Below are positions 1,487 through 59,027 of a DNA stretch of 64,000 nt, piece by piece. This DNA is from Octopus sinensis (lineage: Eukaryota): the NCBI RefSeq assembly GCF_006345805.1, contig NC_043000.1, positions 72,292,001 through 72,356,000 on the forward strand, written 5' to 3'. The notes under the pieces were generated by a model. It was not told the DNA's origin and made no database searches. It saw only the letters and a program-made list of their open reading frames with translations. Position 1 is the stretch's first letter, and every line of letters begins with the position of its first letter. The position numbers were made by a program, and so were the translations under genes.

Positions 1487-1597
1487 ATGTGTGTATATAT
1501 ACATATATATATACATACATATATATATATATACATACATATATATATATACATATATATATATACTATATATATATATATATAGATATATATATAC

Positions 1598-1648
<51 letters not shown>

Positions 1649-1649
1649 C

Positions 1650-1684
<35 letters not shown>

Positions 1685-1869
1685 ATATATATATATATAT
1701 ATTATATATATATATATATTATATACATATATATATAGATATATATATATATATATATATAATATATAATATATATATATACATATATACATATATATAC
1801 ATATACAATATATATATATATATATATATACATATATTATATATATATATATAATACATATATATATAT

Positions 1870-1914
<45 letters not shown>

Positions 1915-1924
1915 ATATATATAT

Positions 1925-1966
<42 letters not shown>

Positions 1967-1989
1967 TATATACATATATATATATATAT
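1487..1989. repeat. Interrupted (TA)n array
   Basis: Direct inspection. Confidence 0.95.
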
Positions 1990-2215
1990 CATATAATTAA
2001 GGGCTAAAGAGGGTTATTCTAAAGCCAAATACACTGTTTTATCCACTTATAATCCGCTTGTTACAGGAAAATTGAAACTGAAAACGGGCAACTAACCTTT
2101 AGAAAATTTAAATTTCGTTATCTCTATATTGAATCAATTTCGGACTTAATCTTATAAAAAAAGATATATTCCTTCTTCAGTAGAAATTTCGATGGGATAT
2201 AAATAAAATACTCAC

Positions 2216-3383
2216 GTATGATCATGGAAAAAGCACAAGCTAAAAACATAACTACACTTGAGTACATCATTTATATCTAAAAATAAAAATTCTTTGGTCA
2301 GCCTCAGAAAACAACGTCCAGACCTTTCGCCGCTACAAATTGTAATGGTTACCAGTCCTCCTGTAGCAAGCATCGAGTTTACTACTAAGCAATATAGGAT
2401 GAAGTCCCTTACTCTACAGCAAAGGAATTCATCAGGAAGCGTGGGCAGTATATTTAAAAAAACCGTTACGGTTGCAATATACATCATATAATTAAGGGCT
2501 AAAGAGGGTTATTCTAAAGCCAAATACACTGTTTTATCCACTTATAATCCGCTTGTTACAGGAAAATTGAAACTGAAAACGGGCAACTAACCTTTAGAAA
2601 ATTTAAATTTCGTTATCTCTATATTGAATCAATTTCGGACTTAATCTTATAAAAAAAGATATATTCCTTCTTCAGTAGAAATTTCGATGGGATATAAATA
2701 AAATACTCACGTATGATCATGGAAAAAGCACAAGCTAAAAACATAACTACACTTGAGTACATCATTTATATCTAAAAATAAAAATTCTTTGGTCAGCCTC
2801 AGAAAACAACGTCCAGACCTTTCGCCGCTACAAATTGTAATGGTTACCAGTCCTCCTGTAGCAAGCATCGAGTTTACTACTAAGCAATATAGGATGAAGT
2901 CCCTTACTCTACAGCAAAGGAATTCATCAGGAAGCGTGGGCAGTATATTTAAAAAAAACGTTACGGTTGCAATATACATCATATAATTAAGGGCTAAAGA
3001 GGGTTATTCTAAAGCCAAATACACTGTTTTATCCACTTATAATCCGCTTGTTACAGGAAAATTGAAACTGAAAACGGGCAACTAACCTTTAGAAAATTTA
3101 AATTTCGTTATCTCTATATTGAATCAATTTCGGACTTAATCTTATAAAAAAAGATATATTCCTTCTTCAGTAGAAATTTCGATGGGATATAAATAAAATA
3201 CTCACGTATGATCATGGAAAAAGCACAAGCTAAAAACATAACTACACTTGAGTACATCATTTATATCTAAAAATAAAAATTCTTCAGTAGAAATTTCGAT
3301 GGGATATAAATAAAATACTCACGTATGATCATGGAAAAAGCACAAGCTAAAAACATAACTACACTTGAGTACATCATTTATAT
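2216..3383 (-). pseudogene. Four antisense copies of the candidate signal-peptide exon (2216-2276, 2711-2771, 3206-3266, 3323-3383)
   Basis: Reverse complements of the 61-nt exon, with acceptor and donor sites intact. Confidence 0.6.
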
Positions 3384-3677
3384 CTAAAAATAAAAATTCT
3401 TTGGTCAGCCTCAGAAAACAACGTCCAGACCTTTCGCCGCTACAAATTGTAATGGTTGCCAGTCCTCCTGTAGCAACCGTAACGGTTTTTTTAAATATAC
3501 TGCCCACGCTTCCTGATGAATTCCTTTGCTGTAGAGTAAGGGACTTCATCCTATATTGCTTAGTAGTAAACTCGATGCTTGCTACAGGAGGACTGGTAAC
3601 CATTACAATTTGTAGCGGCGAAAGGTCTGGACGTTGTTTTCTGAGGCTGACCAAAGAATTTTTATTTTTAGATATAA

Positions 3678-3732
3678 ATGATGTACTCAAGTGTAGTTAT
3701 GTTTTTAGCTTGTGCTTTTTCCATGATCATAC
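3678..3732 (+). CDS. Candidate signal-peptide exon, copy 1 (MMYSSVVMFLACAFSMII, phase-1 donor)
   Basis: Acceptor tttttatttttAG at 3670-3671, ATG at 3678, hydrophobic 18 aa, donor GTGAGT at 3733. Phase matches the VWA exon acceptor. Confidence 0.6.
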
Positions 3733-4171
3733 GTGAGTATTTTATTTATATCCCATCGAAATTTCTACTGAAGAAGGAATATATCTTTTTTTATAAGATT
3801 AAGTCCGAAATTGATTCAATATAGAGATAACGAAATTTAAATTTTCTAAAGGTTAGTTGCCCGTTTTCAGTTTCAATTTTCCTGTAACAAGCGGATTATA
3901 AGTGGATAAAACAGTGTATTTGGCTTTAGAATAACCCTCTTTAGCCCTTAATTATATGATGTATATGCAACCGTAACGGTTTTTTTAAATATACTGCCCA
4001 CGCTTCCTGATGAATTCCTTTGCTGTAGAGTAAGGGACTTCATCCTATATTGCTTAGTAGTAAACTCGATGCTTGCTACAGGAGGACTGGTAACCATTAC
4101 AATTTGTAGCGGCGAAAGGTCTGGACGTTGTTTTCTGAGGCTGACCAAAGAATTTTTATTTTTAGATATAA

Positions 4172-4226
4172 ATGATGTACTCAAGTGTAGTTATGTTTTT
4201 AGCTTGTGCTTTTTCCATGATCATAC
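4172..4226 (+). CDS. Candidate signal-peptide exon, copy 2 (identical)
   Basis: AG at 4164-4165, ATG at 4172, GTGAGT at 4227. Confidence 0.6.
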
Positions 4227-4498
4227 GTGAGTATTTTATTTATATCCCATCGAAATTTCTACTGAAGAAGGAATATATCTTTTTTTATAAGATTAAGTCC
4301 GAAATTGATTCAATATAGAGATAACGAAATTTAAATTTTCTAAAGGTTAGTTGCCCGTTTTCAGTTTCAATTTTCCTGTAACAAGCGGATTATAAGTGGA
4401 TAAAACAGTGTATTTGGCTTTAGAATAACCCTCTTTAGCCCTTAATTATATGATGTATATTGCAACCGTAACGGTTTTTTTAAATATACTGCCCACGC

Positions 4499-4614
4499 TA
4501 TATATATATATATATATATATAATACATATATATATATATAATATACATATATATATATATAATATATATATAATATATAATATATATAATATATATATA
4601 TATAATATATATAT

Positions 4615-4649
<35 letters not shown>

Positions 4650-4825
4650 ATATATATATATACATATAATATATATATATATATATATATTATAATATAT
4701 ATATATTATATATATATATATAATATATATATATACATATTATATATATATTATATATATATATTATATATATATATATATACATATATATATACATATA
4801 TATATATATTTACATATATATATAT

Positions 4826-4893
<68 letters not shown>

Positions 4894-4911
4894 TAATACA
4901 TATATATATAT
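4499..4911. repeat. Interrupted (TA)n array
   Basis: Direct inspection. Confidence 0.95.
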
Positions 4912-5439
4912 TACGGTTTTCGGAGAGGAAAGACGTGTTTGCTTTAGCTCTGTGAAAAAACAAAAAGGTTTGCATAAATCGACGAAATAATCTACTAAAA
5001 GTAACAAAACGTAGAACTCATAAAGTACATTAAAATACATCAATTAAAAATATATTAATCAAAAACGTAATATATTTCGCTTGAAGCCAAATATAATACA
5101 GTAAAGTTAGTTATGCATGCTAGAAACTTCGCCGAAAAAGCACGTGGTGGCAAGTCTTTAATTATCTTCAGCCAAATGTAAGAAGGAAAAAGAATTGTTT
5201 TCTTTTCTGTTGTGAAAGAAAACTTCTTCGTACAAGCACGAGGGTTTGGACTGTACCTTTCAAGATAAGTATCGCTTGTAATTGTTTGTTTATTAATTTT
5301 TTATTTTCCTTTAATATAAGCTAACATCTCAGTTACGATTTACGACGCCATCTTTGTTTACATTCTGAGAATAACTTTCTTTCAATTTCTGTTTCGCTTT
5401 CATATGTTTATTTTCCTGTAATTAGTTTAGAATTAAATA

Positions 5440-6060
5440 ATTCCTTCATTTCCTCACTTTCCTCTACCTCCTCTCTCTTCCCTTACATATATTCCCCCAC
5501 TTCCAGCTCCTTTCTCCATTCCTTTATCTCTCTTTACGCTTACCCTTTCCCTCTCTCTTGCATATCTTACTCCTTTTCCCATCTCTCCTCCTCCCTTTCA
5601 TATCCTCCACTTCTCTCATTTCTCTTTCCTTTCCATCTCACCTCACACTCTCTCATATACTTCTCATTCGCCCATTCTTCTCACTCCGTCTCTCCCTCTC
5701 TCTCACATCCTTCATCCTGTCTCTCCTTCACTCTGTCTCTCTTTCTCTTGTTATCCTCTCCTCCCCTCTGTTTCTGTTTCTCTTCCCCTCCTCTCCTTCA
5801 CTCTGCCTCTCTTTCTTTTCCCCTCTTCTCCTTCACTCTGTCTCTCCTTCTATTCCCCTCCTCTCCCCCTACCTTCCTCTATCTTTTTAGCACACCACAC
5901 CCCCTTGCTTTCCTCCTATCACCCTCTTCATTTCTTTCATAGCACCTCTCTCTTTCCTTCCTATCTCCCTCTCTCTTTCCCTATTTCCCCCCTCTGTGTT
6001 TCTCCGTCTCTACCTTTCTCTATCCCTCATTACCTCTCTAGCCTCTACTCCCCCTCTGGA
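5440..6060. repeat. CT-rich polypyrimidine low-complexity tract, possibly partly the LINE 5' UTR
   Basis: Direct inspection. Confidence 0.85.
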
Positions 6061-6067
6061 CCTCAAA

Positions 6068-6900
6068 ACGAAGATAGCACCAAAGTGGGAAAAGAAAGAG
6101 TTAAATCTTCTGCTGAGAGCATGGACGATTGCTAGTGGTGATCCGCTGAACAACATCATCACTGCCGCGCTAAAAAACAATGGATTTCATAGAACCATTG
6201 ACCAGATAGAGCGGAAGAAAAGTGAGTTTATCCGGTCTTATATGCTTATAACACCACACATCAAAATACTGGACAACATAATTGAAAATTATTGTGGCAA
6301 AGCGGATGAGGATGAAGAGGACGAAAAAGAGAAGGAACTCAGAAGTCTCTGTGATCCAGGGGTTCCTCAGGAAAATGGATCACCTACCCCGGTGAACGAC
6401 CAGGTAGTGAAGGATAGGAGAACCAAGGGAGCAGAAACCGGAAGCCCCCCTGTACCAGTGGTCCTACGAAGAAATGAAAAATTAGAAAAACAGAAGAAAA
6501 AAGGAAGGACCGAAAACAAAATAAGGAGGGAAAAGGAGGAAAAGGCAAAACAACCAAAGCTGAAACCCCAACCCACCACACAAACAGCAGAGAACCCCAT
6601 GGAGGATCCAATGCCACCCAGTACACTTCAGAAACGAAGAAATCTGGAAGGCACCGAATAACCTGTAAGTTCTACCTGTGGGGCAAATGTTGGCATGGTG
6701 AGGATGGCAAAAACTGCCGGTTCGCCCACCCGACACCCCGCCAGAACTTCAGGGGACTCAAGGAGAAAAACTTTACCGAGGGAACACAAGAAATGTCTCC
6801 CAGGAAAACTTTCAAAATCGAAGTGCGCTCCTCAGATGTTCTGCGCAACGCAGCAGCTGAGCAAGAGTCTTTTTTATGCATGGCGGAAAGAATTGTCCGG
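6068..6900 (+). pseudogene. LINE ORF1: Myb/SANT-like trihelix domain plus CCCH zinc finger(s), frameshifted
   Basis: WEKKELNLLLRAW...IITAALKNNGFHRTIDQIERKKSEFIRSY (6086-6241). CKFYLWGKCWHGEDGKNCRFAH (6664-6729) lies in the -1 frame. Confidence 0.7.
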
Positions 6901-6980
6901 CAGCTAACCTGGCTACACCAAGCACAGAGAAGGAACCCTGCCCACCACTATGCAAGACCACCACAGTCAACAGACACGGG

Positions 6981-9942
6981 ATGGCCTCCCCTAACGCCTG
7001 CACAGCCGTCACCCCAATACTTTTACTAAATATTGGGGGCCTGTTGCATCAAAATAAAAACAAAATTTCTTTCCTGAGAGATCTTACTGCATCCAATCAA
7101 GCCCTATGCATAGCACTTGTGGAAACTCACCTCAACCCTGATATAGAGGACGCAGAAGTACACATACCAAACTATGCCATACTGCAAACAGACAGAAGGG
7201 AAAGGAGCCATGGTGGAGTTACTGTATACATCCGAGATGACCTCACACCCCAGGTCTTAATGACATACTCAAATTCGGTATGTGACACTTTAATATAGTC
7301 ATATGCAATACATATTGCCCACCGGATGCCCCAAATCACATAGGAAAGTTTGAAGATTGCCTCACAAGAATTAAAGAAATCCTCATGAATCTGGAACACC
7401 ACGTGACCGTATTTCTTATGGGTGATTTCAACTTCCCCAATGTCAAATGGTCCGAAGGTCACATACTCTCAGGAATGAATCATTGCAAGCAAGTACAGGT
7501 GGAGACCCTGCTCAACCTCACTAGTGCCTTATTCATGGAGCAAGTTGTACTCAAGCCAACTAGGGCGAATAACATTCTGGATCTCTGCTTCACCAACAAT
7601 ATGGACATCATTCATGATGTGAAAGTGACACCGACATCAGTTTCGGATCACAACATAATAGAGCTGTCTATGTTTGGGCCAAAAGTAACCAGAGACATAC
7701 AGCCTAAAGGAAGCACCCGAAATCTCTCCAATCTGAACTTCCACAAAGCAGATTGGAAATCGATCCAAAAAGAGATCCTCAGAGAGGACTGGCCGGAATG
7801 TCTCTCCACACCAGACATTGACATGAAACTAGAATGTTTCATGTCTTCTGTGCAAGCCGTATGCCAGAAATATGTCCCAGAGCACAAGGCCAAAACAAAT
7901 AGGAGCAAGATTCCAAGAGACAGGAAGATCCTCATGAGACGACGGACGAAGGTTGCATATCGTCTCAACCAACATCCCAAAAGTATCGAAACGCCCCGCC
8001 TAAAAATAACACTATGGAGATCGAAAAAAGGCTGCAACAACCCTATGTGAAGGAGAAAGCAGACAAAGAAGCCTGGGTTATAAAAAACATTAAATCAAAC
8101 CCAAAGGCCTTCTTTCATTACGCGAAAGAAACAGTCTCAGTGCACTACAAGATAGGACCCTCATCCAAAAGGATGGCTCCCTCACAGACAGTCCAACTAA
8201 GATCAGTGAGATGCTGAATGACCAGTTCAAAAGTGTCTTTACCACCCCGTTGGAACACAGACAAGTGAACGAACCAGTGGAATTCTTTGCCGCCTCACCT
8301 ATAACCAGCGAGGCGGTTACAATAGAATGTATTGGCATTAGCGAAAAATATGTCCTACTAGCCATAGATGAAGTGGACACAAACTCAGCTGCTGGTCCAG
8401 ACGGTTTCCCAGCAATCCTCCTCAAAGCGTGTAAGCATACCCCTCAAGATTCTCTTCCAGAGCTTTCTTGCGAATGGCAAACTGCCAAGCAAGCTGAAGG
8501 AGGGAATAATATGCCCAATACATAAAGGGGGAAGTAGAGCAGATGCCAAAAACTATAGGCCTATCTCTCTGACTTCACACATCAGCAAAGTCATGGAACG
8601 GATAGTCAGAAAGAAACTAGTCGCATTCCTTGAGGAAAATAACTTGCTGAGTGATACCCAGCATGGTTTTCGACCAGGTAGGAGCTGCCTGACCCAGCTC
8701 TTACAGCATTATGACTGGGTGTTGAGGCAGTTACTCAACAAATCAAATGTGGACGTAATCTACCTTGATTTTGCAAAAGCTTTTGACAAGGTGAATCATG
8801 GTATGATATGCCACAAACTGCATGACCTTGGCATAGCTGGAAAACTTGGAGTGTGGTTGCATGACTTCCTGAAAGATAGGAGCAAGGCAGTAGTGGTTAA
8901 TGGAGCCACCTCTATGAACACACAAATAGTGAGCGGTGTTCCACAGGGCACTGTCTTGGGACCACTGCTTTTTATAGTGGCCCTCTCAGATATGCCCTCA
9001 AATGCCTGGATAGCCACTCTGGCCAGCTATGCAGACGATACGAAAGTCTCGCAGAAAATACAGAACCCCAGCGATGTTGCACACCTGCAGCAGGAGTTGG
9101 ACTCAATTTACAGATGGGCTGAGGATAATAATATGCAGTTTAATGCTGAAAAATTCCAGGTCCTGCGCTACTAGCATCCAAAACTGAATATTAAACTTAC
9201 AGGATACACCGGTCCACAGGGAATTTCAATCCCAGAGCCTAAGTCTGTGAGGGACCTGGGTATCGACATGAGTGATGATACCTTTTTCCAAGTGCACGTT
9301 ACCAGGATGGCGACAAAGTGCAGACAACTGGCTGGGTGGATCCTAAGAACATTCAGAACCAGAGATAAGGAAACCATGATGGTCCTCTGGCGGACATTCG
9401 TCCTCAGCCGCCTGGATTACTGCTCACAGCTATGGTCACTCACCAGTGTAAAATTAACAGCGGACCTTGAAGCAATCCAGAGAAGATTCACAAAGAAGAT
9501 CGTCTCTTTGCAACAGCTCAGCTACTGGGAAAGGTTGAAACAGCTAAGACTCTACTCCCTGGAGAGAAGACGGGAGAGGTATGCAGTAATATATGTCTTG
9601 AAGATCCTGGAAGGAATTGTGCCAAATTTTGGCATTGTAAGCTACACCAATGCTAGAACGGGACGACACTGCATAATGCCAAAGATCCCAGCAATGCCAT
9701 CACGCTTCAGGACCAGCTACTGCACAAGCCTGGGTTTCAAGGGCCCACAGCTTTTTAATATTCTCCCAAAGAGTCTGAGGAACATGCACAAAGTAGATGT
9801 AGCGGTTTTTAAATCAAAGCTGGACATCTTCCTGTCAAGAGTCCCAGATGAACCTACCTCACGGCAAGAGGTGCAAATGAGAGTAGCTATATCAAACTCC
9901 ATTCTTCACCAAGTGCCACATATTAGACGAGGTTCGTCGTAA
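6981..9942 (+). pseudogene. LINE ORF2 (APE endonuclease + reverse transcriptase) with stops and frameshifts
   Basis: Pieces at 6876-7298, 7385-8050, 8211-8525, 8368-9174 and 9247-9942. In-frame TAG at 9172-9174. Confidence 0.92.
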
Positions 9943-10001
9943 TAACAGTGTAGCACAAAACGGCGGTGCATCAGTATGGCCGCAGCTCTGAGCTGAAACT
10001 A

Positions 10002-10060
<59 letters not shown>

Positions 10061-10114
10061 ATGTATACATATACAATCTGTCAGTAGTTCACAAATCCGA
10101 AAAGAAGCACACTC

Positions 10115-10292
10115 TAAAGCTTGGCGGGTTTCTTTCAGTTTTACTCTACTAAATCTACTCAGAAGACTTTGGTCGGCCTGAGGCTGTAGTAGAAGACACT
10201 AGCCAAATGTGCCTTGCAATGGGACTGAACTCAAAATCATGTGGTTGGGAAGTCATGAGGCTGGGAAGCTATACCTGTTCCTGTATATACGC
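10115..10292 (-). mobile_element. SINE family S1 (tRNA head + CORE-like domain), 5' part, decayed
   Basis: Similar to the reverse complement of 33623-33770. Confidence 0.75.
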
Positions 10293-10434
10293 ACATAAAG
10301 TAGATGCTTGAAAATACCTGTGGATAGAGACTTGTCCGTGGGTGATTTTATGTTAATTAATCGGATATTTCATTTTCGTTGTCGTCTACGATTTCAGCAG
10401 CATAAAGATACTCCTTGTTGTACCATTATTTCCC

Positions 10435-10465
<31 letters not shown>

Positions 10466-10955
10466 TGTATGTATGTATGTATGTGTGTATGCATGCATAT
10501 GTGTCTGTGTGTGTATGTATGTATGTATTTATGTATGTATGCATATATGTACAGACATATACACATCATATATAATTTATAAGTAGATATGTTTGTTACC
10601 CAAATAAATGCCCAATATTCGTAGGTATAAATCTGATATTACAATCCTAGGCAGTAAGTTGTAAATCTAATATTTACCACTAGTATTCGGACGTCTGCCT
10701 GTATTACTCACAAACTTTTACCAACTACTAATATTTTATGCAAAACACTATTAACCTTATAAATTTTCATTTCAACATTTAATGATTGAGAGAGAAAAAA
10801 AATCTATACGTATATACGTAAGTGCAGTAGTCGGCAAGATTAACCTGGCGTTATGCTATTTGAAACTTATCTTCGCTAAGCATTTTAGAAAGTGTCTGAA
10901 CATTACAGCTTTTTATTTTTATTTTGAATTAATGTTTACTCTATTCTCATTTCAG

Positions 10956-11551
10956 TTTGCAACAAAACTCAAGAAACAGATTTGATGTTCGTAGTCAATA
11001 ACCATTTGATAGGATATAATAAGACAGAGAAAATTGTGAATGTAGTTGCTGAGATTATCGACCTTCTCGGTAACGAATCGCCCATCCGCACTGGAATGAT
11101 GTACGATGACTGTGAAACAAAAGAAGATATTCCCCTCGGTTCTTTACAAGAAAAAACAGCTTTCATTCAGAGAATAGATAAAATAAAGTTTAATAGTTTT
11201 GCGGGGATGATTAGAAAACTCCGATTAAATGTTTTTCCGGTGGAAGACATAAAGACAAAGAATTCATCTCGGCGAATCGGCTTTCTTTTCCTGGATGAAG
11301 TGTCAAATATAAACGACTTCAACGTCATTAGAGAAGTGAAACGAAGTTTAGGCAATGGTATTCAGTTATACGTTGTTGTGATCGGTGACAGAGTCGATAT
11401 TTCTACCATTGAACGTAACATAGCTCCACGGGAACGAATTATTATAATACCATCATACAACGATCTAAAGTCACTGTTGCCTTCAAAATTTACTGAAAAA
11501 CTTTGCCGCTTAAAAGAATCTTCGCAACACTCGCAACTTGCAAGCACTTGA
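10956..11551 (+). CDS. Terminal exon encoding a von Willebrand factor A domain with a degenerate MIDAS motif
   Basis: Acceptor ctcatttcAG at 10954-10955, phase 1. Reads CNKTQETDLMFVVNN...RRIGFLFLDE...GIQLYVVVIGDRVDISTIERNIAPRERIIIIPSYNDL...KLC, matching VWA strands and helices with flanking Cys. Stop at 11549-11551; AATAAA at ~12330 and 12411. Confidence 0.8.
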
Positions 11552-17600: not shown

Positions 17601-17834
17601 ACTTTCTATTTTTAAACTTGAAACACACCCACAAGAAAATTAAGCAAAAAGATAAAGTACATTTTTGATTATCCTTGGATTTCACCGCGGGTATACTTTC
17701 ATATTTTAAAGCAAAATATTTTAAAGCAAAATACACAAATAGGGAAAGTGAAAGACTATCAATATTTATGCCTGTGTCATTAGAATGCAGACACACACAC
17801 ACACACACACACACTTTGTAAAGGTATATAATTT

Positions 17835-21860: not shown

Positions 21861-21940
<80 letters not shown>

Positions 21941-21958
21941 ATATATATACATATATAC

Positions 21959-21993
<35 letters not shown>

Positions 21994-22461: not shown

Positions 22462-23583
22462 ATATATATGTATGTATGTATATATATGAGAATATTTATA
22501 TAAACAAACTTCGAAGCACCTAGTGAGTTGGTATTTTATAGAAAATAAAGGAAGTCTCGAACACAAAATAGCTGAGTACAAAGCACTCAACCGGAATTTG
22601 AGAGATACAGGGTTGGACACTGTAAGACCTTGCTAGCCAATTTTTGCCTCATCTAAGGGTATGTACCCAAACTTGTAAGCTGATTTCACAACTATTCTGT
22701 GTTTGAGACTTCCTTTTATTTTCTGTAAAATACACACAAACACACACGCACACACATACACGATGGGATTAATATGGTTTCACTCTACCAAATTCACAAT
22801 TTCGCCTACAAGGTATTGTTCCCATGCCGCGAGACTGAAGCAGAAATCACGTCGTTGGGAAGCAAACTTCTTAACAGCACAATTATGCATGCATGCATGT
22901 ATGTATGTATGTATGTGTGTGTGTGTGTGTGTGTGTTGCGGCAAGAGTCATTGACACCTCTGTGGGATTGGATGAATGGACTAGCTGAACTCTTATAAAG
23001 AGTAGCGTATTCGTTGACGAAGTCGTAGGAGTCGCTGAGAGTTCATGGAAGTCGTTGAGAGTTTGTATTTATTGGAATATCGTGTTTAGTGGAGTATTTT
23101 GCAGTACATTGTGTGAAGACAGTTATGCCTATCCTCGCTTCGTGAAATCTGTATATCCACTATATACAAGTATATAAAAGTGGCCACGAGTTTATTCGAA
23201 GCTTACGCCAGGCGTTAACTTTTTTTTTTTGATACAATAATCAAAGAAAAATTAATTAACATGGAATATTTATTAGCCTCCGTGGTGCATCTGCAAGAGC
23301 AACAGCAGCAACAGTTATAGCAACAATGAAAACAACAACACCAATACCAACAGTTGCTGGAATTAATGTTGAAGTTCAAAAATACTTCAGGTTTGTTCTC
23401 GCCAGACGGCAATTGCAGAATTTAGTTATAACCCAGAAGGTATTACTTTTTCTGCATATTTCCGAAGATATGAAGAAATCTTCAAAGAGGAATGCAAAAA
23501 TTGGACGGACAATGAAAAGGTACGACTACTTTTAAGAAAATTATCCCCTGCCGAACACGAAAAATATTGTAACTACATTCTGC

Positions 23584-24214: not shown

Positions 24215-26033
24215 CATTCTGCCAAAAATCCACGTGAAATTTGTTACGACGAAACAATTAAATTGTTATCGAATTTTTTCAGTGAGAGAAGTTCCCTGTT
24301 CAGTACTTGCTGGGAGTGTTTGAATTTAGTTAAAAAAAGATGAAGATTTCGTCACCTATACCAGAGTCGTCAATCGAGAATGCGAAAGATTCAAACTAAA
24401 AGAATTAACCCCAAACATGTTCAAATGTCTAATTTTTGTTCTAAGGTTAACTGCAAGCAAAAATGCAGAGATACTTCTCCGGATATTGACAAAATTGGAA
24501 CAGGACCTAATTGAAGAAAACTCTCACATACATTGCGTGCTGACCTGTAACGGATATGGAAACAGAAAAACGTAGATCAAGACCCAATTCATGCTATGAG
24601 TTTGGAGGTCTACATTTAAAAAATAACTGTCCGTTTAAAAATTTAAAATGTTTTAACTGCAAAAAAAAATCGGACATAAAAGCTCACATTGCAGAGCAGA
24701 GAAAAAAAGGTCGGACGGAAAAAAATCTGGAAATGTTTTCTCAACAGAAAGTTTAGGTGAAGCTCATAAAAGTAAGTTTGTGTACGTAAAAATTAATAAT
24801 GTGAACGTGAAGTTACAGCTAGATACAGGCAGTAATATTACAATTATTAACACTGACACATAGAGAAAAATAGGAAAGTCTACATTAAAAATTGCGAAAG
24901 GTGTCTCAGGAAAAAATTACATCTTTTGGGCGAAATGATAACTGAAGTTACATTTAGGTGTTAAACCTTGAAAACGAAAGTTTTTGAGTTAATTAATGCA
25001 ACAAACTTGTTCGGTACTGACTGGATGGAATTGTTTAATTTATGGGACCTCCCCATAAATCTTTTCAGTAAAAATATAAATAGTTTTTCCTTCAGTAAAA
25101 ACAAGTCGTCAGACGAATTGAAAGAAAAAGTAAAAATATTTTTCCTGAATTTCTGTCCGATAAATTAGTTCTGTGTACCAAAACAAGGGCGTGTTTTCAA
25201 ATAAAAAAAAACGTCAGACTAGTATTTAAACCTAAACGAATGGTACCCTTCGCAGCGATGAAGCAAGTCAATGAAGAACTAGAGAAACTAAAAAAATTGG
25301 AGTTATCCAAAAAGTGGAATATTCTAAATGGGCAGCACCAACTGTATATATTAAGAAAATGAATAATATATTCAGTGTGCGCTGATTTTTCCACTAGTTT
25401 AAACGAATATCTTAAAACGTTACACTATCCGCTTCCTACTCCGAAGAATATTTGTGCGAATTTATTTTTCTAAATTGGATCTCTCTGACACGTACCTACA
25501 AATTAGAATAGACGATTAATGCTCTAAATACCTAACAATTAACACACCTAAAGGACTGTATAGGTTACCATTTGGTTTAAAAGTGGCACCAGCGATTTTT
25601 CAACGGATTATGAATGCAGTGTTAGCAGACTGTGAATTCGCAATTCCATATCTGGATCATACACTCAACAAAAGCGAATCCAGGGATCAAAACATTGAGC
25701 ACGTAAAATATGTATTTGAAAAAATTAGGGATTACGGCTTTACCTTGAATGAAGAAAAGTGTGAATTGTTCTTACCGGAAATAAGATATTTGACAAATAT
25801 AGACGACGACCTGACCCGTCGAAGGCAGACGCAATCAAAAGTATGCCTCTTCCGACAAATATAGCCACCTTACAAACATTTTTAGGACTCGCAAATTATT
25901 ACCAAAATTATATCCCAAATATGCATAAGGTTAGAGTTCCACTGAATAATTTGTTGAAAAAAGATATGAAATAGGATTGGACAGAAAATTGCCAAAAGGC
26001 GTTTCACGAAGTTAAAAATATATTAACATCATA

Positions 26034-49652: not shown

Positions 49653-52600
49653 AATTCTTTTTATTGGCCACAAGGGCTGACACACATGATTAGTAAACAT
49701 AAAGGGACAAAACAGGACGAAAGGTTACAAAGGGCTTTGTCCGTTTTTGAAAAAATCCGAGTAAAAACTGTTTAACAACGAAAGATTATAACAATGAAAA
49801 AACTCCCAATAGGGGGAGGCGCTTCGAAAGGTTCCTGGTGGAAAAAAAACCCATAAAAGCCAACGGGAGCCTGGTCAAAAGGGGGGTAGAGAGCCCCTTT
49901 CTCCTTTTATAAAACCTTTTTCAATCACAGGCGAAACCTGAGAATTGGTCCATTTATACTGGCCATTCTCGCACAATTCACCCACCTTTCAGAAAACTTG
50001 CTATCGGACAGCACTCTCCTCTCTAACCTCATCTTCCTTTTCAAGTGAAACTTGAAAAAGTTGATGAGGCCTTGACCAAAGAGGAAAGTGTCTGACTTTA
50101 GCCCTTTCAAACGGGTCCACCATACAATCTCTTTCGCCACAGCCACTAGGCACAGGAAAACGGCCTCGCCCTCCTTGTTAAAGGAGGTCGGCGGGGCAAT
50201 CTTCACTATGGATTCGGCTGATAGCCGGATCCGTCCTATACGCGACAGTAGCTGTTCGACATAAACCCATAGTTCAGCAATACTCGGGCACTGGACGAGT
50301 GCGTGCAGAACGGTTTCGTCGTTCTAGCAACACCTCGGGCATGCCCGGCTGACGGCACTTCCGTGCCGATAGAGTTTATCCCGAACAGGCAGAGCCCCTC
50401 GGTAGCACTGCCAAGCGAGCGACCTCTGGAAATTATCCATTGGCCCCGGCCCGAAAGTCCTTCCGAACAGACCGCTCAGTTCGTTATCATCAACGCCTAG
50501 AGTTTCCCCGAGAACGTCGTCGCATTTTTCCTCCACTAACCTTCTATAGAATGCTAGAGTGGAACTAAAACCGATCGCATTGCCCGCCCGGCGGAGGGCG
50601 GAGAGAGCTTGATGGCACTCGAGGTGCCAAGCGCCCTTTCTTGGTCTACGTTTGATCCAGGTCTGCAGCTCTGTCAAAGAGACGAGCTGCGGAAAGTCGC
50701 GTCTGACAAAAGACGACCACACCTGATTACCGTCTAGGAAACGCTTGAGATGTCGCAGCCTGAGTGCATGTCTGCGCATCAGTAGCCAAGGCCTCCGTTC
50801 AGCGGTCGTTGACAGCAGATGGATCGCCTGACCAGTGGCACCTGACCCTTCCACAAAAAGTCGAAGAGCAGGCGTACCAGCTTGGCCAACCAGCGGTTGG
50901 GACAAGGGACAACGGTCAAGCGGTAATAGATGACGGATGCGATGTATGCATTCGCCACCTCCGCTCGACCTTTCAGGGACAGCTTCCTCTCGGCCCATTT
51001 CTGGGTGAGACGTGCCACCCTGCTCGTCACTTCTTCCCAGTTTTTATCCACCTGGAGGTCCGGACCGAACTGGACCCCGAGCAGTTTAAAGGGTCCGTCT
51101 GTCCAGCGCCGTACGACGCTGTTGGACGGCATGGGCTTACCTCTCCAGGTGCCCAGTTGCAAGCCCACAGACTTTTCCGCGTTAATCTTTGCCCCTGTCA
51201 CCGCTTCGTACTCGTTTAGTGTCTCGCCAATCAGGCCAATGTGCCTGTGGTTCGACACCATCACGGTGACGTCGTCGGCATTGGCAGACATGCTGTTTCC
51301 GCCTCCTAGATCGCGCGGGATACCCCTCAAAGCCTCCAACTTGCGCAGTAATAGCTCGAGAGTCAATATGTACAAGAGGGAGGAGAGAGGGCATCCTTGG
51401 CGGACCGAACGCGAGATGTCAAACGGTTCCGAAAAGTGACTGTTCACCCGTATCACCGAGCAGATGTTGCTGTATAAAGCAGCGATCCACCCGCGGAAGA
51501 CTGGACCGAAGCCGGCTGCCTTGAGAACAGCTGCCAGGTACCGATGGTCGACCCTATCAAAGGCTTCACTCTGATCTAAGTTGATCAAAGCCCCACCCGC
51601 GCCAGCGTCGTTACCCACCCTCTCTATGATGTAGCGCATGAGATGGAGGTTGTCGTGTATCGACCTGGTCGGCACGCCGCATGTCTGCGTCTTGCCGACC
51701 AGCTTGTCCACGACAAGCGCCAATCTCTTGGCTAGCACCTTGGCCAAAATCTTCAACTCTGCATTGAGCAGAGTGATGGGCCGAAAATTCCCTATAATGT
51801 CCCCCTTGTTTGGGTCCTTTTTTAGCAAAGCCCCCATCCCCCCGACAGACAAAAGCAGGAATTCTCCCGTTTTGCTGCCAGTTGCAGTAGACGTTTGCCA
51901 ACAGGCCCGCAAACAAGTCTGGCATTGAAGTGTAAAGCTCGTAGGGCAGACCATCCAAACCCGGCGATCTACCTCTCGTGCAACTCTTCATCGCTTCCTC
52001 CACTTCCCAGGCAGATATCGGTCCTTCGCAGCACTCTGCCTCGCTGTCCGAGAGTTGCGGTAGGCCGTCCAGGTACACACCGAAGTCTGCACCATTGTGC
52101 GTTCCACCGCTCGTCTCAAACAGTTGAGCAAAGTACCGCTGAAACACCGTACACATCTGCTTCGGTTCGGTAAACTCGCGCCCGTTCTGGTCCACCAAAG
52201 ACCGAATGGTTGCTTTGTTGCCTCGCTTCGCCTCCGCCACGCGGGCCCATCGAGCGGCTCTAGTCCCCTCCCCGCTTAGCGAACGTGCCTTAGCTCTGAC
52301 AACGCAGCCTTCGTGTTTAGCGTCAAAGTTTTGTTCGAGGGCCAACCTTGCCGCCAACACGTCGGTCGCGATGTCAGTCTCAAGAGCCTCGTCTAGTTTC
52401 TTAACTAAATCTCGCTCTCTTCCTACGTTCAATAGCTAGAGTCTTACTAAATCTAATCGACTCTACTCTAATTGCTCTCTTGAGGGCAAACCACCAGTTG
52501 TTGTTGATGATTGCCCCCGTGAGCGCCCGCTTAACTAGTAAACTAATCCGGTCTCTGTAAGCTTTGCACGCCGTTAACGACGCGTTCAGCTTCCAGTAGC

Positions 52601-55014
52601 CGGGTCCCTGTCTATGTAGCCTATCTAAGTCGACCGTACAGATCACGAATTTGTGGTCCGTGTAGTCGACTAGGTGGAATTGTGGATACCCTATGCTGTC
52701 CTTATCCACTGGCCTACAAAACACTCTATCTAAGTACGATCTAGACGACCCGATGCGATTGATCCAAGTCCACATTGGCACATTCGGGTTGTTTAGTCGA
52801 AACCTGTCGGACAGCTGAAAGCGTCCGAGTAGGTTGGCGAGGCTCTTGCACCCTCTTCTCCTATCAGACGCTCCCCTGCCCACCCGATCGAAACGTTCGT
52901 CTAAGACAGCGTTCCAATCCCCAACTAACACTAGAGTGCGTGACGTTCCCAGGAAAACTTCCAGACGTTTGAAATAATCCGACTGCCCTGCTCCTGTCGG
53001 AGCGTAGGCAGCCAGCAGTCTGAAAGCACCGCCGTCACTACCGTCTACGTCGAGGACCACTAACTTACTTTCCGGATCCAGGAAGACTGTCCTTATTTTC
53101 AAGTCCAGCCCCTTCCGAAACAACATCGCAGTACCACCACCGCCCGCTCCCGGCCGACACGGAGATAGAAATATCTCGTATCAGCCGAAAAGGGCTGCGA
53201 GTTCCTGCGGGTCGGAGAGCCTGGTTTCACTGATGGCTGCTACATCCACATCATGAAACCTCAGGTCGTTTAACAGGTGACTCTGTTTCCAAGGTGACCC
53301 GAGGCCTCTCACATTCAAGCAACCGATTCTAAGTTTTGTCATGTTTCAAAGGTGGAAAAAAAAATAAAAGGAGAAAAAGGCTCTACGTACTGTTGTTGGT
53401 GGTGGGAGTGGCTCCCTTGTGCTTTTGCACGGGTGCTTCGATTATATTTTAATAAAGTTTCTTTGAGAAACTTTTCCCTAGCGATTCGACATCGTTAGGG
53501 AATATTTGTTTTATTTCACTATATGTTTTTTGATTGATTTTTATTGTGAGAATGTGTGCTGGTGGTGTGTTGTGTGTTGATATAACGAAATCTTCAATTT
53601 GTGTACTTGTATTGTCTTTTAGATATGTAACTATTTTTTCATTTTTTGTGTTTATTGCTGTAATCGTGTCTGTTGGTGTTGGTGTGTACGGCAGTGGCAG
53701 TAGTGGCGTCGAAAGTGTTGTTGTGAGTGTGTGTTGTTGTTGTTGTTGATGATGTTGGGAAGCACTATTTGTTCGTGCTTCCCCTGTGTGTCCTTTTGTT
53801 TTTTCCTCCTTTTCTTCTTTGGAGGCACTGTGTGCCATTCCCCTTTCTCGGTATCAGTGCTCGCACAATCCGAGCTGTCCTGATCCGGAAAGGGGATGGC
53901 TGTCAGCAGGGCGAAGGATTTTTGTTGGTTCTGCTGGTAGCGGTGGTGTTGCTGTGTCTATTGGTGATGATGACAGTGTTGGTGTTTCTCCTTGTTTCTT
54001 GTTGTCGTTTTTCTTGGTGCTGGGGTTGGTGTTGGTTTGGTGGTTGTTGTTGGAGGTGGTGTCGTTCGTCGTGGTGGTGGTGATGGTGTTGGTGATGTGG
54101 CAGCCTTTGGTGTTTCGTGCTGTTGTTGTTGTTTCTGTTGTTGTTGTTGTTGTTGTGTTGTTGTTGTTGTTGTTGTTGTTGTTGCTGCTGCTGCTGCTGC
54201 CTCTTGTTGAATGCCTCCATTCTTTTTTGTGAATGGGGCAGTCCTTCTTCAGGTGGTTTTCGCTACTGCAGAGGTAACATTTTGGCTTTCGCCCCTCCAC
54301 AGTAACGTGCAGCTTGGTTCCGTCTGGTAAAATGACTGAGTCAGGTATGGCATTAATGTTTTCCTGCTGGATTTGTACCAGCAGTTGAATACCCATACCT
54401 GACCAGTTCTTCTCTCTTACCCTTCGAACATCTAGAATAGTGGCAGTGTCCTCTATGTCATAGAGGACAGCCGCCACCAGCCATGATATACTGAGTTCGG
54501 GGGGTATTATATTAATTTTAATTTTTTGTACTTTCCGCCCAAGGTATGATGGGACCAGAAAGAAATTTTCATTTTGCAAGGGCGAAATGGCATGCGCCCT
54601 TGCATCGTCTTCCGTTGGGAAGCGAACCTCCACCGTCCCGTAACACTTCCCTCTTGTGACATAGCTCTTTTTGACCCATATGGGTTTAAGAGCCATTTCC
54701 AATTGTTGATGTGTTGCATTAGTTATTTTTTTGGTTTTCTTGTCGAAAACTTTATAAATTATAGTTTTTTTGTTTCGTTTATGAGTTGTTGAGGTGTATT
54801 GAGGAAGACACTATTTTCCTCTTTTTTCAACAACCCCTTTGCAGATTTTATTTCGTCAAATGTAATTTCAATTTGTTCTGTGTCTTGTTTTGTGATGGAA
54901 GCAAAATTGCTATGGTGGTTTGTTGTGTTGTTGCTGGTGGTGTTGTCGGTGATGCTGTTTGTTATTTTCTTTTCTTCTTTCTCCCCTACTGTTGCACTTA
55001 TGGAATGAAGTGAA
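49653..55014 (-). mobile_element. Tx1-clade LINE, nearly complete (ORF1 5'-truncated; ORF2 53342 to 49925 with several disablements)
   Basis: ORF1 zinc knuckle CYLCSSENHLKKDC; APE, GPGYWKLNASL, RT and CPRC..HALVQC; (ATT)n tail on its own strand. Confidence 0.93.
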
Positions 55015-57662
<2,648 letters not shown>

Positions 57663-57882
57663 CTCCCGACGCCGATGGACGTACGTGAATCAGCTCTGTG
57701 AGTTTTGTGCCAATTTTGTTGGAAATTTTTTAATAAGCTTGAATATTTTTTAATATTTTTGTAGCCAAACCGACCGGCTTCTTGCGGAGCTCGTCGGTTG
57801 GGCGAAGTTTTGCCCCTTCGGGGTGAAATTGCTCTTTATTACATTGAAGTTGACATTTTTTATGCACACACACATTTACAAA

Positions 57883-59027
57883 ATGGCTTTAAAACGAGCT
57901 GCTGGCTCTTCCCTCCTTCTTGCAACACCCCCTCCACAAGAACAAAAGGCAACGTCACGGGTTACGTACAACCCATTTCAAGCCGTAAAAGGCAACAAAG
58001 ATCCTCCTTCCGAACCGGAGTGCACGCGCTCGGTTCAAAAGGAGAATGCAAGCCAGGACGTCGCGTTCGACGTCACTCTTGATTTCCCTCCTCTGCCTTC
58101 AACAAGTGATGCTGTACCGAAGAGGGAGGAAAAGAAACTTATAGCAGACAAAAATACAGACAAGAACCAACAAAAAAATGTTAAAAACTCTAACGATTTT
58201 GCTTCTGCTGCGAAGCAAATTTCGGAAGATGTAGATATAACGATGGAGGACATAAAGATGGCACAAGATTTGTTGAGAAAGGAGGGGAACAGTGTTTTCC
58301 TCAACACACCTCAACAACTCACACAAGAGACAAACAAAAGAACAATCTTTTATAAAGTCTTCGAAAAGAAAACTAAAAGATTGTTTAACGCCACACCACA
58401 ACAGTTAGAGATGGCTCTGAAGCCCATTTGGGGCCAGAAGAGCTATGTGACAAGAGGGAAGCGATTTGGAACCGTGGAGGTTCGCTTCCCAACAGAGGAG
58501 CTTGCAAGGGCGAACGCCATTTCGCCCTTGCAAAATGAACATTTGTTCCTCGTCCCGACGTACCTCGGGCGTAAGGTACAAAAAATAACTATAAGCACAA
58601 TACCCCCCGAACAGAAAATCTCATGGCTAGTGGCGGCTGTCCTCTATGGCATAGAGGACACTGCCACTATTCTGAATGTTCGGAGGGTACGAGAAAAGAA
58701 CTGGTCAGGCATGGGAATTCAACTGCTGGTACAGATCCAGCAGGAAAACATCAATGCCATACCTGACTTTGTCATCTTGCTGGATGGGACAAGNNNNNNN
58801 NNNNNNNNNNNNNNNNNNNNNNNNNNNNNNNNNNNNNNNNNNNNNNNNNNNNNNNNNNNNNNNNNNNNNNNNNNNNNNNNNNNNNNNNNNNNNAAATAAA
58901 ACAAATATTCCCTAACGATGTGGGATCGCTAGGGAAAAGTTTCTCTCAGAAACTTTACAAAAATATCATTGAAGCACCCGTGCAAAAGCACAAGGGAGCC
59001 ACCCCCACCACCAACAACAGTAAGTAG
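57883..59027 (+). CDS. Tx1 ORF1 (RRM-like/knuckle-type nucleic-acid-binding protein), interrupted by the assembly gap
   Basis: ATG at 57883; homologous to the minus-copy ORF1; TAG at 59025-59027. Confidence 0.8.
58794..58893. other. Assembly gap (100 N, nominal size)
   Basis: N run. The homologous segment in the minus copy is ~800 bp and repeat-rich. Confidence 0.98.

What the first reader, a model, noticed from the sequence alone, without database searches (positions are those of the whole stretch)
1990..4498. A 2.5-kb palindrome that has amplified a signal-peptide exon into 4 antisense and 2 sense copies, bounded by (TA)n arrays
Seen: three tandem 495-bp units, a strand switch at a GCAA microhomology (~3473-3476) next to a small AACCG-TAA-CGGTT hairpin, then two and a bit inverted units. 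Copies are almost identical and both ends fall in (TA)n tracts. Each unit holds a complete AG..GTGAGT exon encoding MMYSSVVMFLACAFSMII. Established: long (TA)n tracts are cruciform-prone break sites, and tandem-plus-inverted products with microhomology typify template-switching repair. Inference: a read-through pre-mRNA would fold into a ~1-kb duplex covering the start-codon exon. That could be an ADAR or endo-siRNA substrate, or give alternative first coding exons. Near-identity also fits a fold-back assembly artifact.
Basis: partly seen in the sequence, partly recalled or inferred. Interest (0 to 1): 0.75.

Follow-up and report, generated by a model that had tools for sequence, protein, structure and literature searches.

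The report
Fold-back duplication of a gene's start exon
A 2.5-kb block inside a long (TA)n tract holds six near-identical copies, four inverted and two direct, of the likely start exon of a small secreted VWA-domain gene in what looks like an octopus genome. Its central joint matches the known footprint of snap-back DNA repair, so it is a tidy example of an ordinary mutational process, not a new kind of system.

Summary
Between two (TA)n arrays (1494-1989, 4499-4911) lie three antisense copies of a 495-bp unit, the third truncated. The strand switches at GCAA (3473-3476), followed by 2.08 sense copies. A 117-bp internal duplication gives a fourth antisense exon. Copies differ at three columns and one 1-nt indel.

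New here: the sense exon (4172-4226, donor GTGAGT) is in phase with a conserved acceptor at 10955|10956 and a 198-codon exon for a VWA-fold domain. The splice would give a 216-aa secreted protein. Relatives are cephalopod proteins (Argonauta hians 56%), and dN/dS against an 86%-identical orthologue is 0.28.

The central joint is a fold-back signature. GCAA and TTGC lie 102 nt apart in the sense unit, the 102-nt spacer continues into the sense arm, and the predicted product matches the sequence except for one substitution 15 nt away.

A missed-adapter or chimeric-read artefact is disfavoured. The arms are not mirror images and both TA arrays have the same polarity. It cannot be excluded without reads.

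Hairpin-RNA, ADAR or siRNA roles are untested. If each copy carries its own promoter, they point outward, so a hairpin would need outside read-through.

Verdict: a new member of a known kind, of modest interest.

The parts
1494..1989 (.). Left (TA)n array, interrupted by C (24 C, 2 G on the + strand).
   Evidence: TRF; base composition.
1990..2476 (-). Antisense unit A1 (sense columns 489 to 1). Its outer end passes directly into the TA array. Contains exon copy 2216-2270.
2477..2971 (-). Antisense unit A2, complete (495 nt), with a private substitution at 2958. Contains exon copy 2711-2765.
2972..3279 (-). Antisense partial unit A3a (sense columns 495-188). Contains exon copy 3206-3260. Its last 117 nt (3163-3279) are repeated in the next part.
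   Evidence: The duplication joint has a 5-nt TTCTT microhomology.
3280..3476 (-). Antisense partial unit A3b (sense columns 304-108). Contains exon copy 3323-3377. It has a private substitution at 3458, 15 nt from the inversion joint.
3473..3476 (.). Inversion joint. GCAA is shared by rc(sense columns 111-108) and sense columns 2-5.
3477..3578 (+). Single-copy spacer (sense columns 6-107), the loop of the inferred snap-back. It is continuous with sense copy B1.
   Evidence: pair I17 (197-nt arms 102 nt apart).
3473..3966 (+). Sense unit B1 (494 nt). Start exon 3678-3732, donor GTGAGT at 3733.
3967..4460 (+). Sense unit B2 (494 nt), the copy nearest the downstream coding exon. Start exon 4172-4226, donor GTGAGT at 4227.
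4461..4498 (+). Truncated sense unit B3 (first ~39 nt of the unit), joined to the TA array at ...CCCACGCT|ATAT.
4499..4911 (.). Right (TA)n array (8 C, 0 G on the + strand). It has the same polarity as the left array.
4227..10955 (+). Putative intron 1. Holds B3, the right (TA)n array, CT-rich repeats and a + strand non-LTR retrotransposon (endonuclease 6876-8050, reverse transcriptase 8368-9174). Ends in tttcag.
   Evidence: The acceptor is conserved in L001 and L002.
10956..11551 (+). Coding exon 2: 198 codons plus the stop. Encodes a VWA-fold domain that begins at a conserved Cys. The intron before it is phase 1.

Best explanation
WHAT IT IS. The block is a young local rearrangement of the 5' module of a small gene for a secreted VWA-domain protein, in what is probably an octopod genome. 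The module comprises a putative promoter or 5' leader, a 55-nt start-codon/signal-peptide exon, and the first 234 nt of intron 1. It lies within or beside a long (TA)n tract.

HOW IT AROSE (inferred from the joints).
1. The module was first duplicated in tandem with a 495-bp period. The unit-to-unit joint is GTATAT|TGCAA.
2. A break or collapsed fork occurred in the TA tract just upstream of the first sense copy and exposed a 3' end ...TTGC.
3. That end snapped back onto GCAA 102 nt inward on the same strand and primed DNA synthesis.
4. Synthesis copied the sense array outward and produced the inverted arm. It slipped back once by 117 nt at TTCTT, probably once more by a whole unit, and left two substitutions.
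5. The new tail ended in the TA-like end of a unit and was captured by the self-complementary TA tract on the other side of the break. This closed the chromosome without forming a dicentric.

WHAT IT DOES (inferred).
- Most likely nothing adaptive.
- B2, and possibly B1, still serve as the start exon spliced to exon 2 at 10956.
- The four antisense start exons are orphans. No coding partner lies in the 2.2 kb to their left.
- A long RNA hairpin would form only if an outside promoter reads through both arms.
For: Structure and near-identity of the copies.

Fold-back geometry:
- Sense columns 2-5 are GCAA and columns 108-111 are TTGC.
- The predicted product, rc(columns >= 112) followed by column 2 onward, equals the observed 392 nt around the joint except for the 3458 substitution.
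- The 102-nt spacer is continuous with B1, so the sense side is the original and the antisense side is the copy.

Other joints carry microhomology: TTCTT (5 nt) at the 117-bp duplication and T at the right border.

Both non-boundary substitutions lie in the inferred newly made arm, and one is 15 nt from the joint.

The two TA arrays have the same polarity. C:G is 24:2 and 8:0, and shared C-containing 12-mers number 20 direct versus 0 inverted. The inversion therefore stops at the unit copies.

Published fold-back cases show the same footprint: a spacer plus 2-8 bp of inverted microhomology in humans (PMC3907307), and stems as short as 4 bp with large loops and a required secondary event in yeast (PMC7467729). 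Long TA repeats are cruciform-forming break sites (PMC9890227 and PMC12972899).

Gene model:
- Exon 1 ends in phase 1, and the acceptor tttcag|TT TGC restores the frame to give 216 aa.
- An in-frame TAA lies directly before the ATG.
- Only one comparable short hydrophobic ATG..GTRAGT feature exists in the other ~123 kb of strand sequence.
- The exon-2 domain has 94 relatives, among them about 200-aa proteins with a hydrophobic N-terminus directly followed by the conserved Cys, which reads as a signal peptide plus a single VWA domain.
- Acceptor position and phase are conserved in Argonauta hians and in L001.
- dN/dS is 0.28.
- The predicted fold matches VWF A and integrin I domains.
Against: - No reads, second individual or sister-species locus confirms the structure. 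Every attempt to find the unit or the joint elsewhere failed.
- Some copy differences sit next to homopolymers (A7C to A8, TT to T), as long-read consensus errors do.
- The antisense arm (3.0 units) is longer than the sense arm (2.08 units), so extra slippage or a later deletion must be assumed.
- The right border (column 39|TA) is not explained by the single event.
- Use of the exon is not shown by RNA. The spliced 216-aa protein is in no searched proteome.
- The nearest named relative has five further upstream coding exons, including a first VWA domain. Exon 2 could therefore belong to a longer gene that starts beyond the window.
Confidence: 0.58

Rival explanations
1. Assembly or library artefact. 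The genome has one or a few sense units. The inverted arm would come from a chimeric fold-back long read (or in-vitro snap-back synthesis) that the assembler stitched into the self-complementary (TA)n tract.
For: - Copies are near-identical, and the differences are partly of the homopolymer type.
- The block is bounded by TA arrays, which are hard to sequence and overlap in either orientation.
- The scaffold carries a gap elsewhere.
- No independent occurrence of the unit or the joint was found.
Against: - A missed adapter gives exact symmetry about the joint. Here there is a 102-nt spacer.
- A chimeric read would make the left arm and its flank a mirror of the right. Instead the left arm has an extra 117-bp duplication, its third unit is complete and ends at column 489 rather than column 39, and the adjoining TA array carries C, not G, on the + strand right up to the border.
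- The left flank 1-1493 is unrelated to the right flank.
Confidence: 0.2
2. Same end product, but built without a broken end. Either serial replication template switches (FoSTeS/MMBIR) at a stalled fork made it, or several separate events did: unequal exchange between TA tracts for the tandem copies and a later independent inversion. Identity between arms would then be maintained by gene conversion, so the block could be old.
For: - At least four distinct joints carry 1-5 nt of microhomology.
- The arms differ in copy number, and the right border is unexplained by one fold-back.
- Arm-to-arm gene conversion keeps large palindromes near-identical (established knowledge from sex-chromosome palindromes).
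Against: The central joint fits snap-back priming exactly, including a spacer continuous with one arm. A fork-switch model does not require this. The sequence alone cannot separate the two models.
Confidence: 0.15
3. The block is a working hairpin-RNA locus. A read-through transcript folds into a ~0.9-kb duplex covering the start exon and is diced into endo-siRNAs or hyper-edited by ADAR, regulating the VWA gene.
For: - A transcript across 3000-4499 would fold at -939 kcal/mol into a nearly continuous duplex.
- The arms are homologous to the gene's own start exon.
- hpRNA loci in Drosophila arise as inverted copies of pieces of their targets (PMC10317233 and PMC10292708).
- Coleoid cephalopods edit RNA heavily (PMC5705066).
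Against: - There is no RNA evidence of any kind.
- If each copy carries its own promoter, they point away from the centre. No upstream + strand gene or promoter was identified in 1-1493.
- The arms show no divergence pattern that would indicate selection.
Confidence: 0.06
4. The unit is a mobile element or satellite, for example a Helitron-like rolling-circle element that targets AT dinucleotides and has captured a gene fragment.
For: - The block is inserted in TA.
- Each unit has a small subterminal hairpin.
- The copies are head-to-tail.
Against: - There is no other copy in the 64 kb or in the Argonauta locus.
- There is no 5'-TC...CTRR-3' terminus at the unit joint (ATACA|TCATA, read).
- The hairpin has only 5 bp.
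- The truncated and inverted copies are joined by microhomology, not at element ends.
- There is no Rfam or protein signature.
Confidence: 0.02

Closest known systems
Fold-back (snap-back) inverted duplications in human constitutional rearrangements (Hermetz et al. 2014, PMC3907307)
   Same: An inverted and a non-inverted copy are separated by a single-copy spacer. Short inverted microhomology (2-8 bp there, 4 bp here) lies at the spacer/inversion boundary.
   Different: The human cases are 10 kb to tens of Mb in size, have spacers of 0.77-70 kb, and lie next to terminal deletions or translocations. This one is 1.5 kb with a 102-nt spacer. It is interstitial, nested in a short tandem array, and closed inside a (TA)n tract.
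Foldback-inversion rearrangements in yeast (Li et al. 2020, PMC7467729)
   Same: ssDNA hairpins with stems as short as 4 bp and large loops prime synthesis near a break. A secondary event is needed to stabilise the product.
   Different: The yeast events were selected in mutants and resolved by homologous recombination or telomere capture. Here the second end appears to have been captured by TA-repeat annealing. The genetic requirements are unknown.
Long (TA)n / Flex1 AT repeats as cruciform-forming fragile sites (PMC9890227, PMC12972899)
   Same: The flanking arrays of 413-496 nt are far longer than the (AT)34 repeat shown there to stall forks and break. Every outer border of the block lies in or beside TA sequence.
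   Different: That the initiating break lay in the TA tract is inferred from the position of the joint (sense column 2, next to the TATAT remnant). It is not shown.
Duplication-inverted triplication-duplication and related replicative complex rearrangements (e.g. PLP1 locus, PMC4352052)
   Same: Direct and inverted extra copies are mixed, with several microhomology joints.
   Different: Those rearrangements depend on pre-existing inverted low-copy repeats and span tens of kb or more. No pre-existing inverted repeat is evident here.
Drosophila hairpin-RNA (hpRNA) loci (PMC10317233, PMC10292708)
   Same: An inverted duplication of a piece of a protein-coding gene that could fold into a long RNA hairpin.
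   Different: No transcription or small RNAs are shown. The arms cover the promoter, start exon and intron start, not mature mRNA sequence. If each copy carries its own promoter, they face outward.
VWA-domain extracellular proteins (VWF A domains, integrin I domains, collagen VI, mussel PTMP1)
   Same: Exon 2 folds as an alpha/beta VWA domain bracketed by N- and C-terminal Cys residues and preceded by a signal peptide.
   Different: The MIDAS motif DxSxS is replaced by N-N-H. The Pfam score is below threshold. It is a single domain of 216 aa, where the nearest relatives have 2-3 domains.

Membership tests
Fold-back inverted duplication | An inverted copy adjoins a non-inverted copy of the same sequence. 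| tested here: met
   Arms 1982-3476 and 3473-4499 are 98-100% complementary.
Fold-back inverted duplication | A single-copy spacer lies between the arms and is continuous with the non-inverted copy. | tested here: met
   3477-3578 equals sense columns 6-107 and is continuous with B1. It has no partner next to the joint in the antisense arm.
Fold-back inverted duplication | Short inverted microhomology at the two ends of the spacer allows intrastrand priming. | tested here: met
   GCAA (columns 2-5) and TTGC (columns 108-111). The predicted product matches 391 of 392 nt.
Fold-back inverted duplication | Initiated by a double-strand break and stabilised by a secondary event. | not testable with these tools
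   Inferred only. The joint lies at the first base of the unit next to a TATAT remnant, and the outer end of A1 merges into (TA)n.
Replicative microhomology-mediated complex rearrangement (MMBIR/FoSTeS) | Several joints with microhomology in one locus. | tested here: met
   GCAA (4 nt), TTCTT (5 nt), T (1 nt) and TA-like overlap at the left border.
Replicative microhomology-mediated complex rearrangement (MMBIR/FoSTeS) | Point mutations clustered near the joints. | tested here: inconclusive
   One substitution lies 15 nt from the inversion joint (3458) and one further away in A2 (2958). That is too few for statistics.
hpRNA / endo-siRNA locus | A long inverted repeat able to form dsRNA. | tested here: met
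   Folding 3000-4499 gives -939 kcal/mol and a near-continuous duplex. About 921 nt are pairable.
hpRNA / endo-siRNA locus | One transcript spans both arms, and 21-22-nt small RNAs or A-to-G clusters map to it. | not testable with these tools
   No RNA data are available. The spliced or unspliced products are absent from the protein collections.
Palindromic AT-rich repeat (PATRR) | The arms themselves are AT-rich and form a near-perfect palindrome with a symmetric centre. | tested here: not met
   The arms are unique sequence of ~33% GC. The centre is asymmetric with a 102-nt spacer. Only the flanks are (TA)n.
Helitron or other transposable element | Dispersed copies with defined termini (5'-TC...CTRR-3' and a 3' hairpin). 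| tested here: not met
   There is no other copy in the window or in L002. The unit joint is ATACA|TCATA with no CTRR.
Missed-adapter / chimeric fold-back read artefact | Exact symmetry about the joint, with the inverted arm and its flank mirroring the other side. | tested here: not met
   There is a spacer of 102 nt. The left arm has a 117-bp duplication and a different TA border. The TA arrays have the same polarity.
VWA domain (Pfam PF00092) | Score at or above the Pfam gathering threshold. | tested here: not met
   The exon-2 product scores 18.6 bits against a cut-off of 23.8, although the match covers profile positions 12-170 of 174. Relatives P0062, P0067 and P0024 score 65-72 bits over the homologous stretch.
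VWA domain (Pfam PF00092) | Alpha/beta fold like VWF A and integrin I domains. | tested here: met
   The model has pLDDT 63.8 and pTM 0.65. The top 18 PDB matches are all VWF A or integrin I domains, with E 3e-5 to 9e-4 and TM 0.41-0.51. Model confidence is moderate.
VWA domain (Pfam PF00092) | MIDAS metal site DxSxS. | tested here: not met
   The window has DLMFVVNNHLIG where P0002's first domain has DIVFVVDSSSSI.

The most novel reading that the evidence does not exclude
The inverted arms are transcribed together, for example from an upstream promoter or as part of a longer pre-mRNA. In that case a cephalopod gene has just produced, from its own start exon, a hairpin that is diced or ADAR-hyper-edited and feeds back on the gene. 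This would be a hairpin-RNA locus caught at birth, in a lineage known for heavy RNA editing.
Probability: 0.06. Interest if true: 0.65.

Novelty: new member of a known kind. Interest (0 to 1): 0.32.

Why it matters
If the assembly is right, this is a base-pair-resolved germline fold-back inversion in a cephalopod. All its joints are intact, and it sits in the kind of long (TA)n tract known from human and yeast work to break. It shows how such tracts can multiply and invert a gene's start exon, producing alternative first exons, orphan antisense exons and potential hairpins.

It also reveals an apparently unannotated small VWA-domain gene under purifying selection. Neither point changes current understanding. 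The value is as a clean natural example, and as a caution that this locus needs read-level validation.

Tried and rejected
- **Unit elsewhere in the window.** I searched with exact 20-mers and with blastn word size 9 and found nothing outside 1982-4499.
- **Mirror flanks.** The sequence left of 1494 and right of 4911 is unrelated, so this is not a large palindrome that includes the whole gene.
- **Rfam.** Only low-complexity microRNA-like hits appear in the TA array, and nothing in the unit.
- **Independent evidence for the unit or the joint.**
  - Exact look-up of ten unit or joint ORFs found none.
  - A homology search with the 123-aa joint-spanning ORF found none.
  - DNA pattern scans of metagenome and viral contigs found none.
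  - A metagenome scan with the exon-2 protein found none.
- **Species identification.** Exact look-up of ten window ORFs found none, and no paper mentions SRR11869385.
- **Argonauta-type upstream exons.** I looked in the window for the signal-peptide, first VWA and linker exons and found only noise.
- **Longer annotated orthologues (198-630 aa).** Only the Argonauta protein turned up.
- **PDB sequence search with exon 2.** Only chance-level leucine-rich-repeat hits appeared, E 0.08-0.4. The fold search was informative instead.
- **Helitron reading.** Rejected on the termini and on the lack of other copies.
- **Antisense partners.** No phase-1 acceptor followed by an ORF of 40 or more codons lies left of the antisense exons.
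Full report
**1. Is it there?**

Yes. Reading the sequence, the repeat finders and my own alignment of the copies give the following layout on the + strand:

- (TA)n array, 1494-1989.
- Antisense copies A1 1990-2476, A2 2477-2971, A3a 2972-3279, A3b 3280-3476.
- Strand switch at GCAA, 3473-3476.
- Sense copies B1 3473-3966, B2 3967-4460, B3 4461-4498.
- (TA)n array, 4499-4911.

The unit is 495 nt long. The third antisense copy is not complete. It runs from sense column 495 to 188, repeats columns 304-188 (a 117-bp tandem duplication), and stops at column 108. This explains the four antisense exon copies (2216-2270, 2711-2765, 3206-3260, 3323-3377) and two sense copies (3678-3732, 4172-4226).

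Among all copies only three columns vary, and one T is missing at the B1/B2 joint. The unit occurs nowhere else in the window. The only assembly gap is far away, at 58794-58893.

**2. What does the unit carry?**

In the sense orientation, columns 1-206 lie upstream. Columns 207-261 are ATG ATG TAC ... ATC ATA C, followed by GTGAGT. The rest is intron-like. The peptide MMYSSVVMFLACAFSMII is strongly hydrophobic, with a mean Kyte-Doolittle value of 2.0. An in-frame TAA lies directly before the ATG, so in this frame the exon can only be a start-codon exon.

The exon ends in phase 1. On the same strand, 6.7 kb downstream, an acceptor tttcag|TT TGC ... at 10955|10956 opens a 198-codon exon that runs to TGA at 11549-11551. 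Joining the two gives a 216-aa product: a leader followed directly by a Cys-bracketed domain.

That domain is real and conserved:

- Pfam VWA matches nearly the whole profile, though below threshold (18.6 against 23.8 bits).
- An exhaustive search finds 94 relatives. Their homologous stretches score 65-130 bits for VWA.
- A predicted model (pLDDT 64, pTM 0.65) matches VWF A and integrin I domains first in the PDB.
- The named relatives are cephalopod proteins: Argonauta hians (56% identity), Sepia pharaonis and Octopus vulgaris.
- A short interspersed repeat in the window has many copies in the Argonauta locus.

I therefore infer an octopod source. The species was not determined.

An 86%-identical copy from another sequencing project (L001) conserves the acceptor and gives dN/dS of 0.28 with dS of 0.225. 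The Argonauta gene has its last intron at the same position and in the same phase. Several relatives of about 200 aa have a hydrophobic N-terminus immediately followed by the conserved Cys, which reads as a signal peptide plus a single VWA domain. This is the architecture the splice would give here. Outside the repeat, the other ~123 kb of strand sequence holds only one comparable short hydrophobic ATG..GTRAGT feature. A chance exon in a 1-kb target, in the right phase, is therefore unlikely.

Caveats on the gene model:

- No RNA evidence exists.
- The 216-aa protein is absent from all searched collections.
- The Argonauta protein has five further upstream coding exons, including a first VWA domain. 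None of these is detectable in the window. Exon 2 could belong to a longer gene that starts beyond position 1.
- I put the two-exon model at about two in three.

**3. How was the block made?**

The central joint fits snap-back priming exactly. In the sense unit, columns 2-5 read GCAA and columns 108-111 read TTGC, which are inverted complements 102 nt apart. Suppose a break lies just upstream of column 2 and is resected. The exposed 3' end ...TTGC can then fold back onto GCAA and prime synthesis along its own strand. The predicted product is rc(columns 112 onward) followed by column 2 onward. It equals the observed sequence at 391 of 392 positions, and the one difference is the private substitution at 3458.

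The 102-nt spacer (3477-3578) is continuous with B1. The sense arm is therefore the original and the antisense arm the copy. This fits the orientation of exon 2.

This is the footprint described for human inverted duplications, which have a single-copy spacer and 2-8 bp of inverted microhomology (PMC3907307). It also matches yeast foldback inversions, which have stems as short as 4 bp, large loops and a need for a secondary stabilising event (PMC7467729).

The other joints also carry microhomology: TTCTT at the 117-bp duplication and a single T at the right border. The outer end of A1 leaves the unit at column 489 in a TA-like stretch and merges into the left array.

Both TA arrays carry C and almost never G on the + strand (24:2 and 8:0). 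They share C-containing 12-mers only in direct orientation, 20 against 0. The inversion therefore ends at the unit copies. The arrays look like two parts of one polar tract.

A coherent sequence of events is:

1. Tandem duplication of the module.
2. A break in the TA tract next to the first copy. Long TA repeats are known cruciform and break sites (PMC9890227, PMC12972899).
3. Snap-back priming.
4. Synthesis outward with a 117-nt slip and probably a unit-length slip.
5. Annealing of the TA-ended tail to the self-complementary TA tract on the other side of the break.

Steps 1, 2, 4 and 5 are inferred. The geometry of step 3 is shown by the sequence. The column 39|TA border on the right is not explained by this event and needs a separate deletion or switch.

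**4. Could it be an artefact?**

I cannot map reads, so this stays open at about one in five.

Against the usual artefacts:

- A missed adapter gives exact symmetry about the joint. Here there is a spacer.
- A chimeric fold-back read stitched in through the TA tract would make the left arm and its TA flank a mirror of the right. Instead the left arm has the 117-bp duplication, its third unit is complete, and its TA border is at column 489 rather than 39.
- The adjoining TA array has the wrong polarity for a reverse-complemented copy.

In favour of caution:

- Two of the copy differences sit next to homopolymers.
- No independent occurrence of the unit or the joint could be found.

**5. What does it do?**

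Probably little.

- B2 is the copy nearest exon 2, and B1 is an upstream duplicate. Either could supply the start exon.
- Including B2's exon as an internal exon, through the AG at 4164-4165, would shift the frame.
- The four antisense exons point left. No VWA exon and no phase-1 acceptor followed by an ORF of 40 or more codons lies in the 2.2 kb available there.
About 921 nt are pairable, and the fold energy for 3000-4499 is -939 kcal/mol. It requires one transcript across both arms.
- If each unit has its own promoter, the promoters are divergent and transcribe away from the centre. A hairpin then needs read-through from an outside promoter, and none was identified.
- The hpRNA analogy (PMC10317233, PMC10292708) and ADAR targeting in cephalopods (PMC5705066) remain untested possibilities.

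**6. Comparison and verdict**

The block works like, and meets the testable defining features of, a fold-back inverted duplication nested in a microhomology-mediated complex rearrangement at an AT-repeat tract.

- It is not a PATRR. The arms are unique sequence of ~33% GC and the centre is asymmetric.
- It is not a transposon. There are no other copies and no element termini.
- It is not shown to be an hpRNA locus.
- It is a new member of a known kind.

Interest is modest. It is a clean natural example with all joints preserved, it affects the start exon of an apparently unannotated VWA gene under purifying selection, and it sits in a lineage where a hairpin would be worth checking. Read-level validation is the first thing needed.

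Noticed in passing
window 49918-62508: Two full-length non-LTR retrotransposons lie head-to-head. The left copy is on the - strand (ORF2 about 49918-53272, gag-like ORF1 53854-54702 with a CCHC knuckle). The right copy is on the + strand (ORF1 57823-58793, ORF2 59089-62508). The ORF2 arms are 94-97% complementary and the ORF1 arms 83%. Between them lie an RT fragment (55205-55966, - strand), a 1.7-kb (TTA)n array (55968-57661) and the only assembly gap (58794-58893). This could be a second inverted duplication centred on a simple repeat, or two independent insertions.
   Followed up: partly
window 1494-1989, 4499-4911, 21862-21993: All three (TA)n arrays in the window are interrupted by C and almost never by G on the + strand (24:2, 8:0, 3:0). 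This strand polarity is unexplained. It could reflect a common origin of the interruptions (TACA variants) or a strand-biased mutation process.
   Followed up: partly
window 10126-10220; L002 at several sites (e.g. 17636-17710, 22595-22659, 24763-24857): A ~90-nt interspersed repeat in the putative intron has at least seven copies, in both orientations, in the 37-kb Argonauta hians locus at 76-84% identity. It looks like a SINE-like family shared across octopods.
   Followed up: no
window 10956-11551 and L001 517-1062: The VWA-domain exon has no annotated orthologue in any searched proteome apart from the 490-aa Argonauta protein. It is nevertheless conserved with dN/dS 0.28 and lacks the MIDAS motif. 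It looks like an unannotated small secreted VWA gene in octopods.
   Followed up: yes
window 5996-9942: A + strand non-LTR retrotransposon sits inside the putative intron 1, in the same orientation as the gene. It has an endonuclease at 6876-8050 and a reverse transcriptase at 8368-9174, and it is broken by frameshifts.
   Followed up: partly
window 3163-3396: The 117-bp tandem duplication inside the inverted arm has a TTCTT microhomology joint and creates the fourth antisense exon copy. It is absent from the sense arm. It therefore arose during or after synthesis of the inverted arm.
   Followed up: yes
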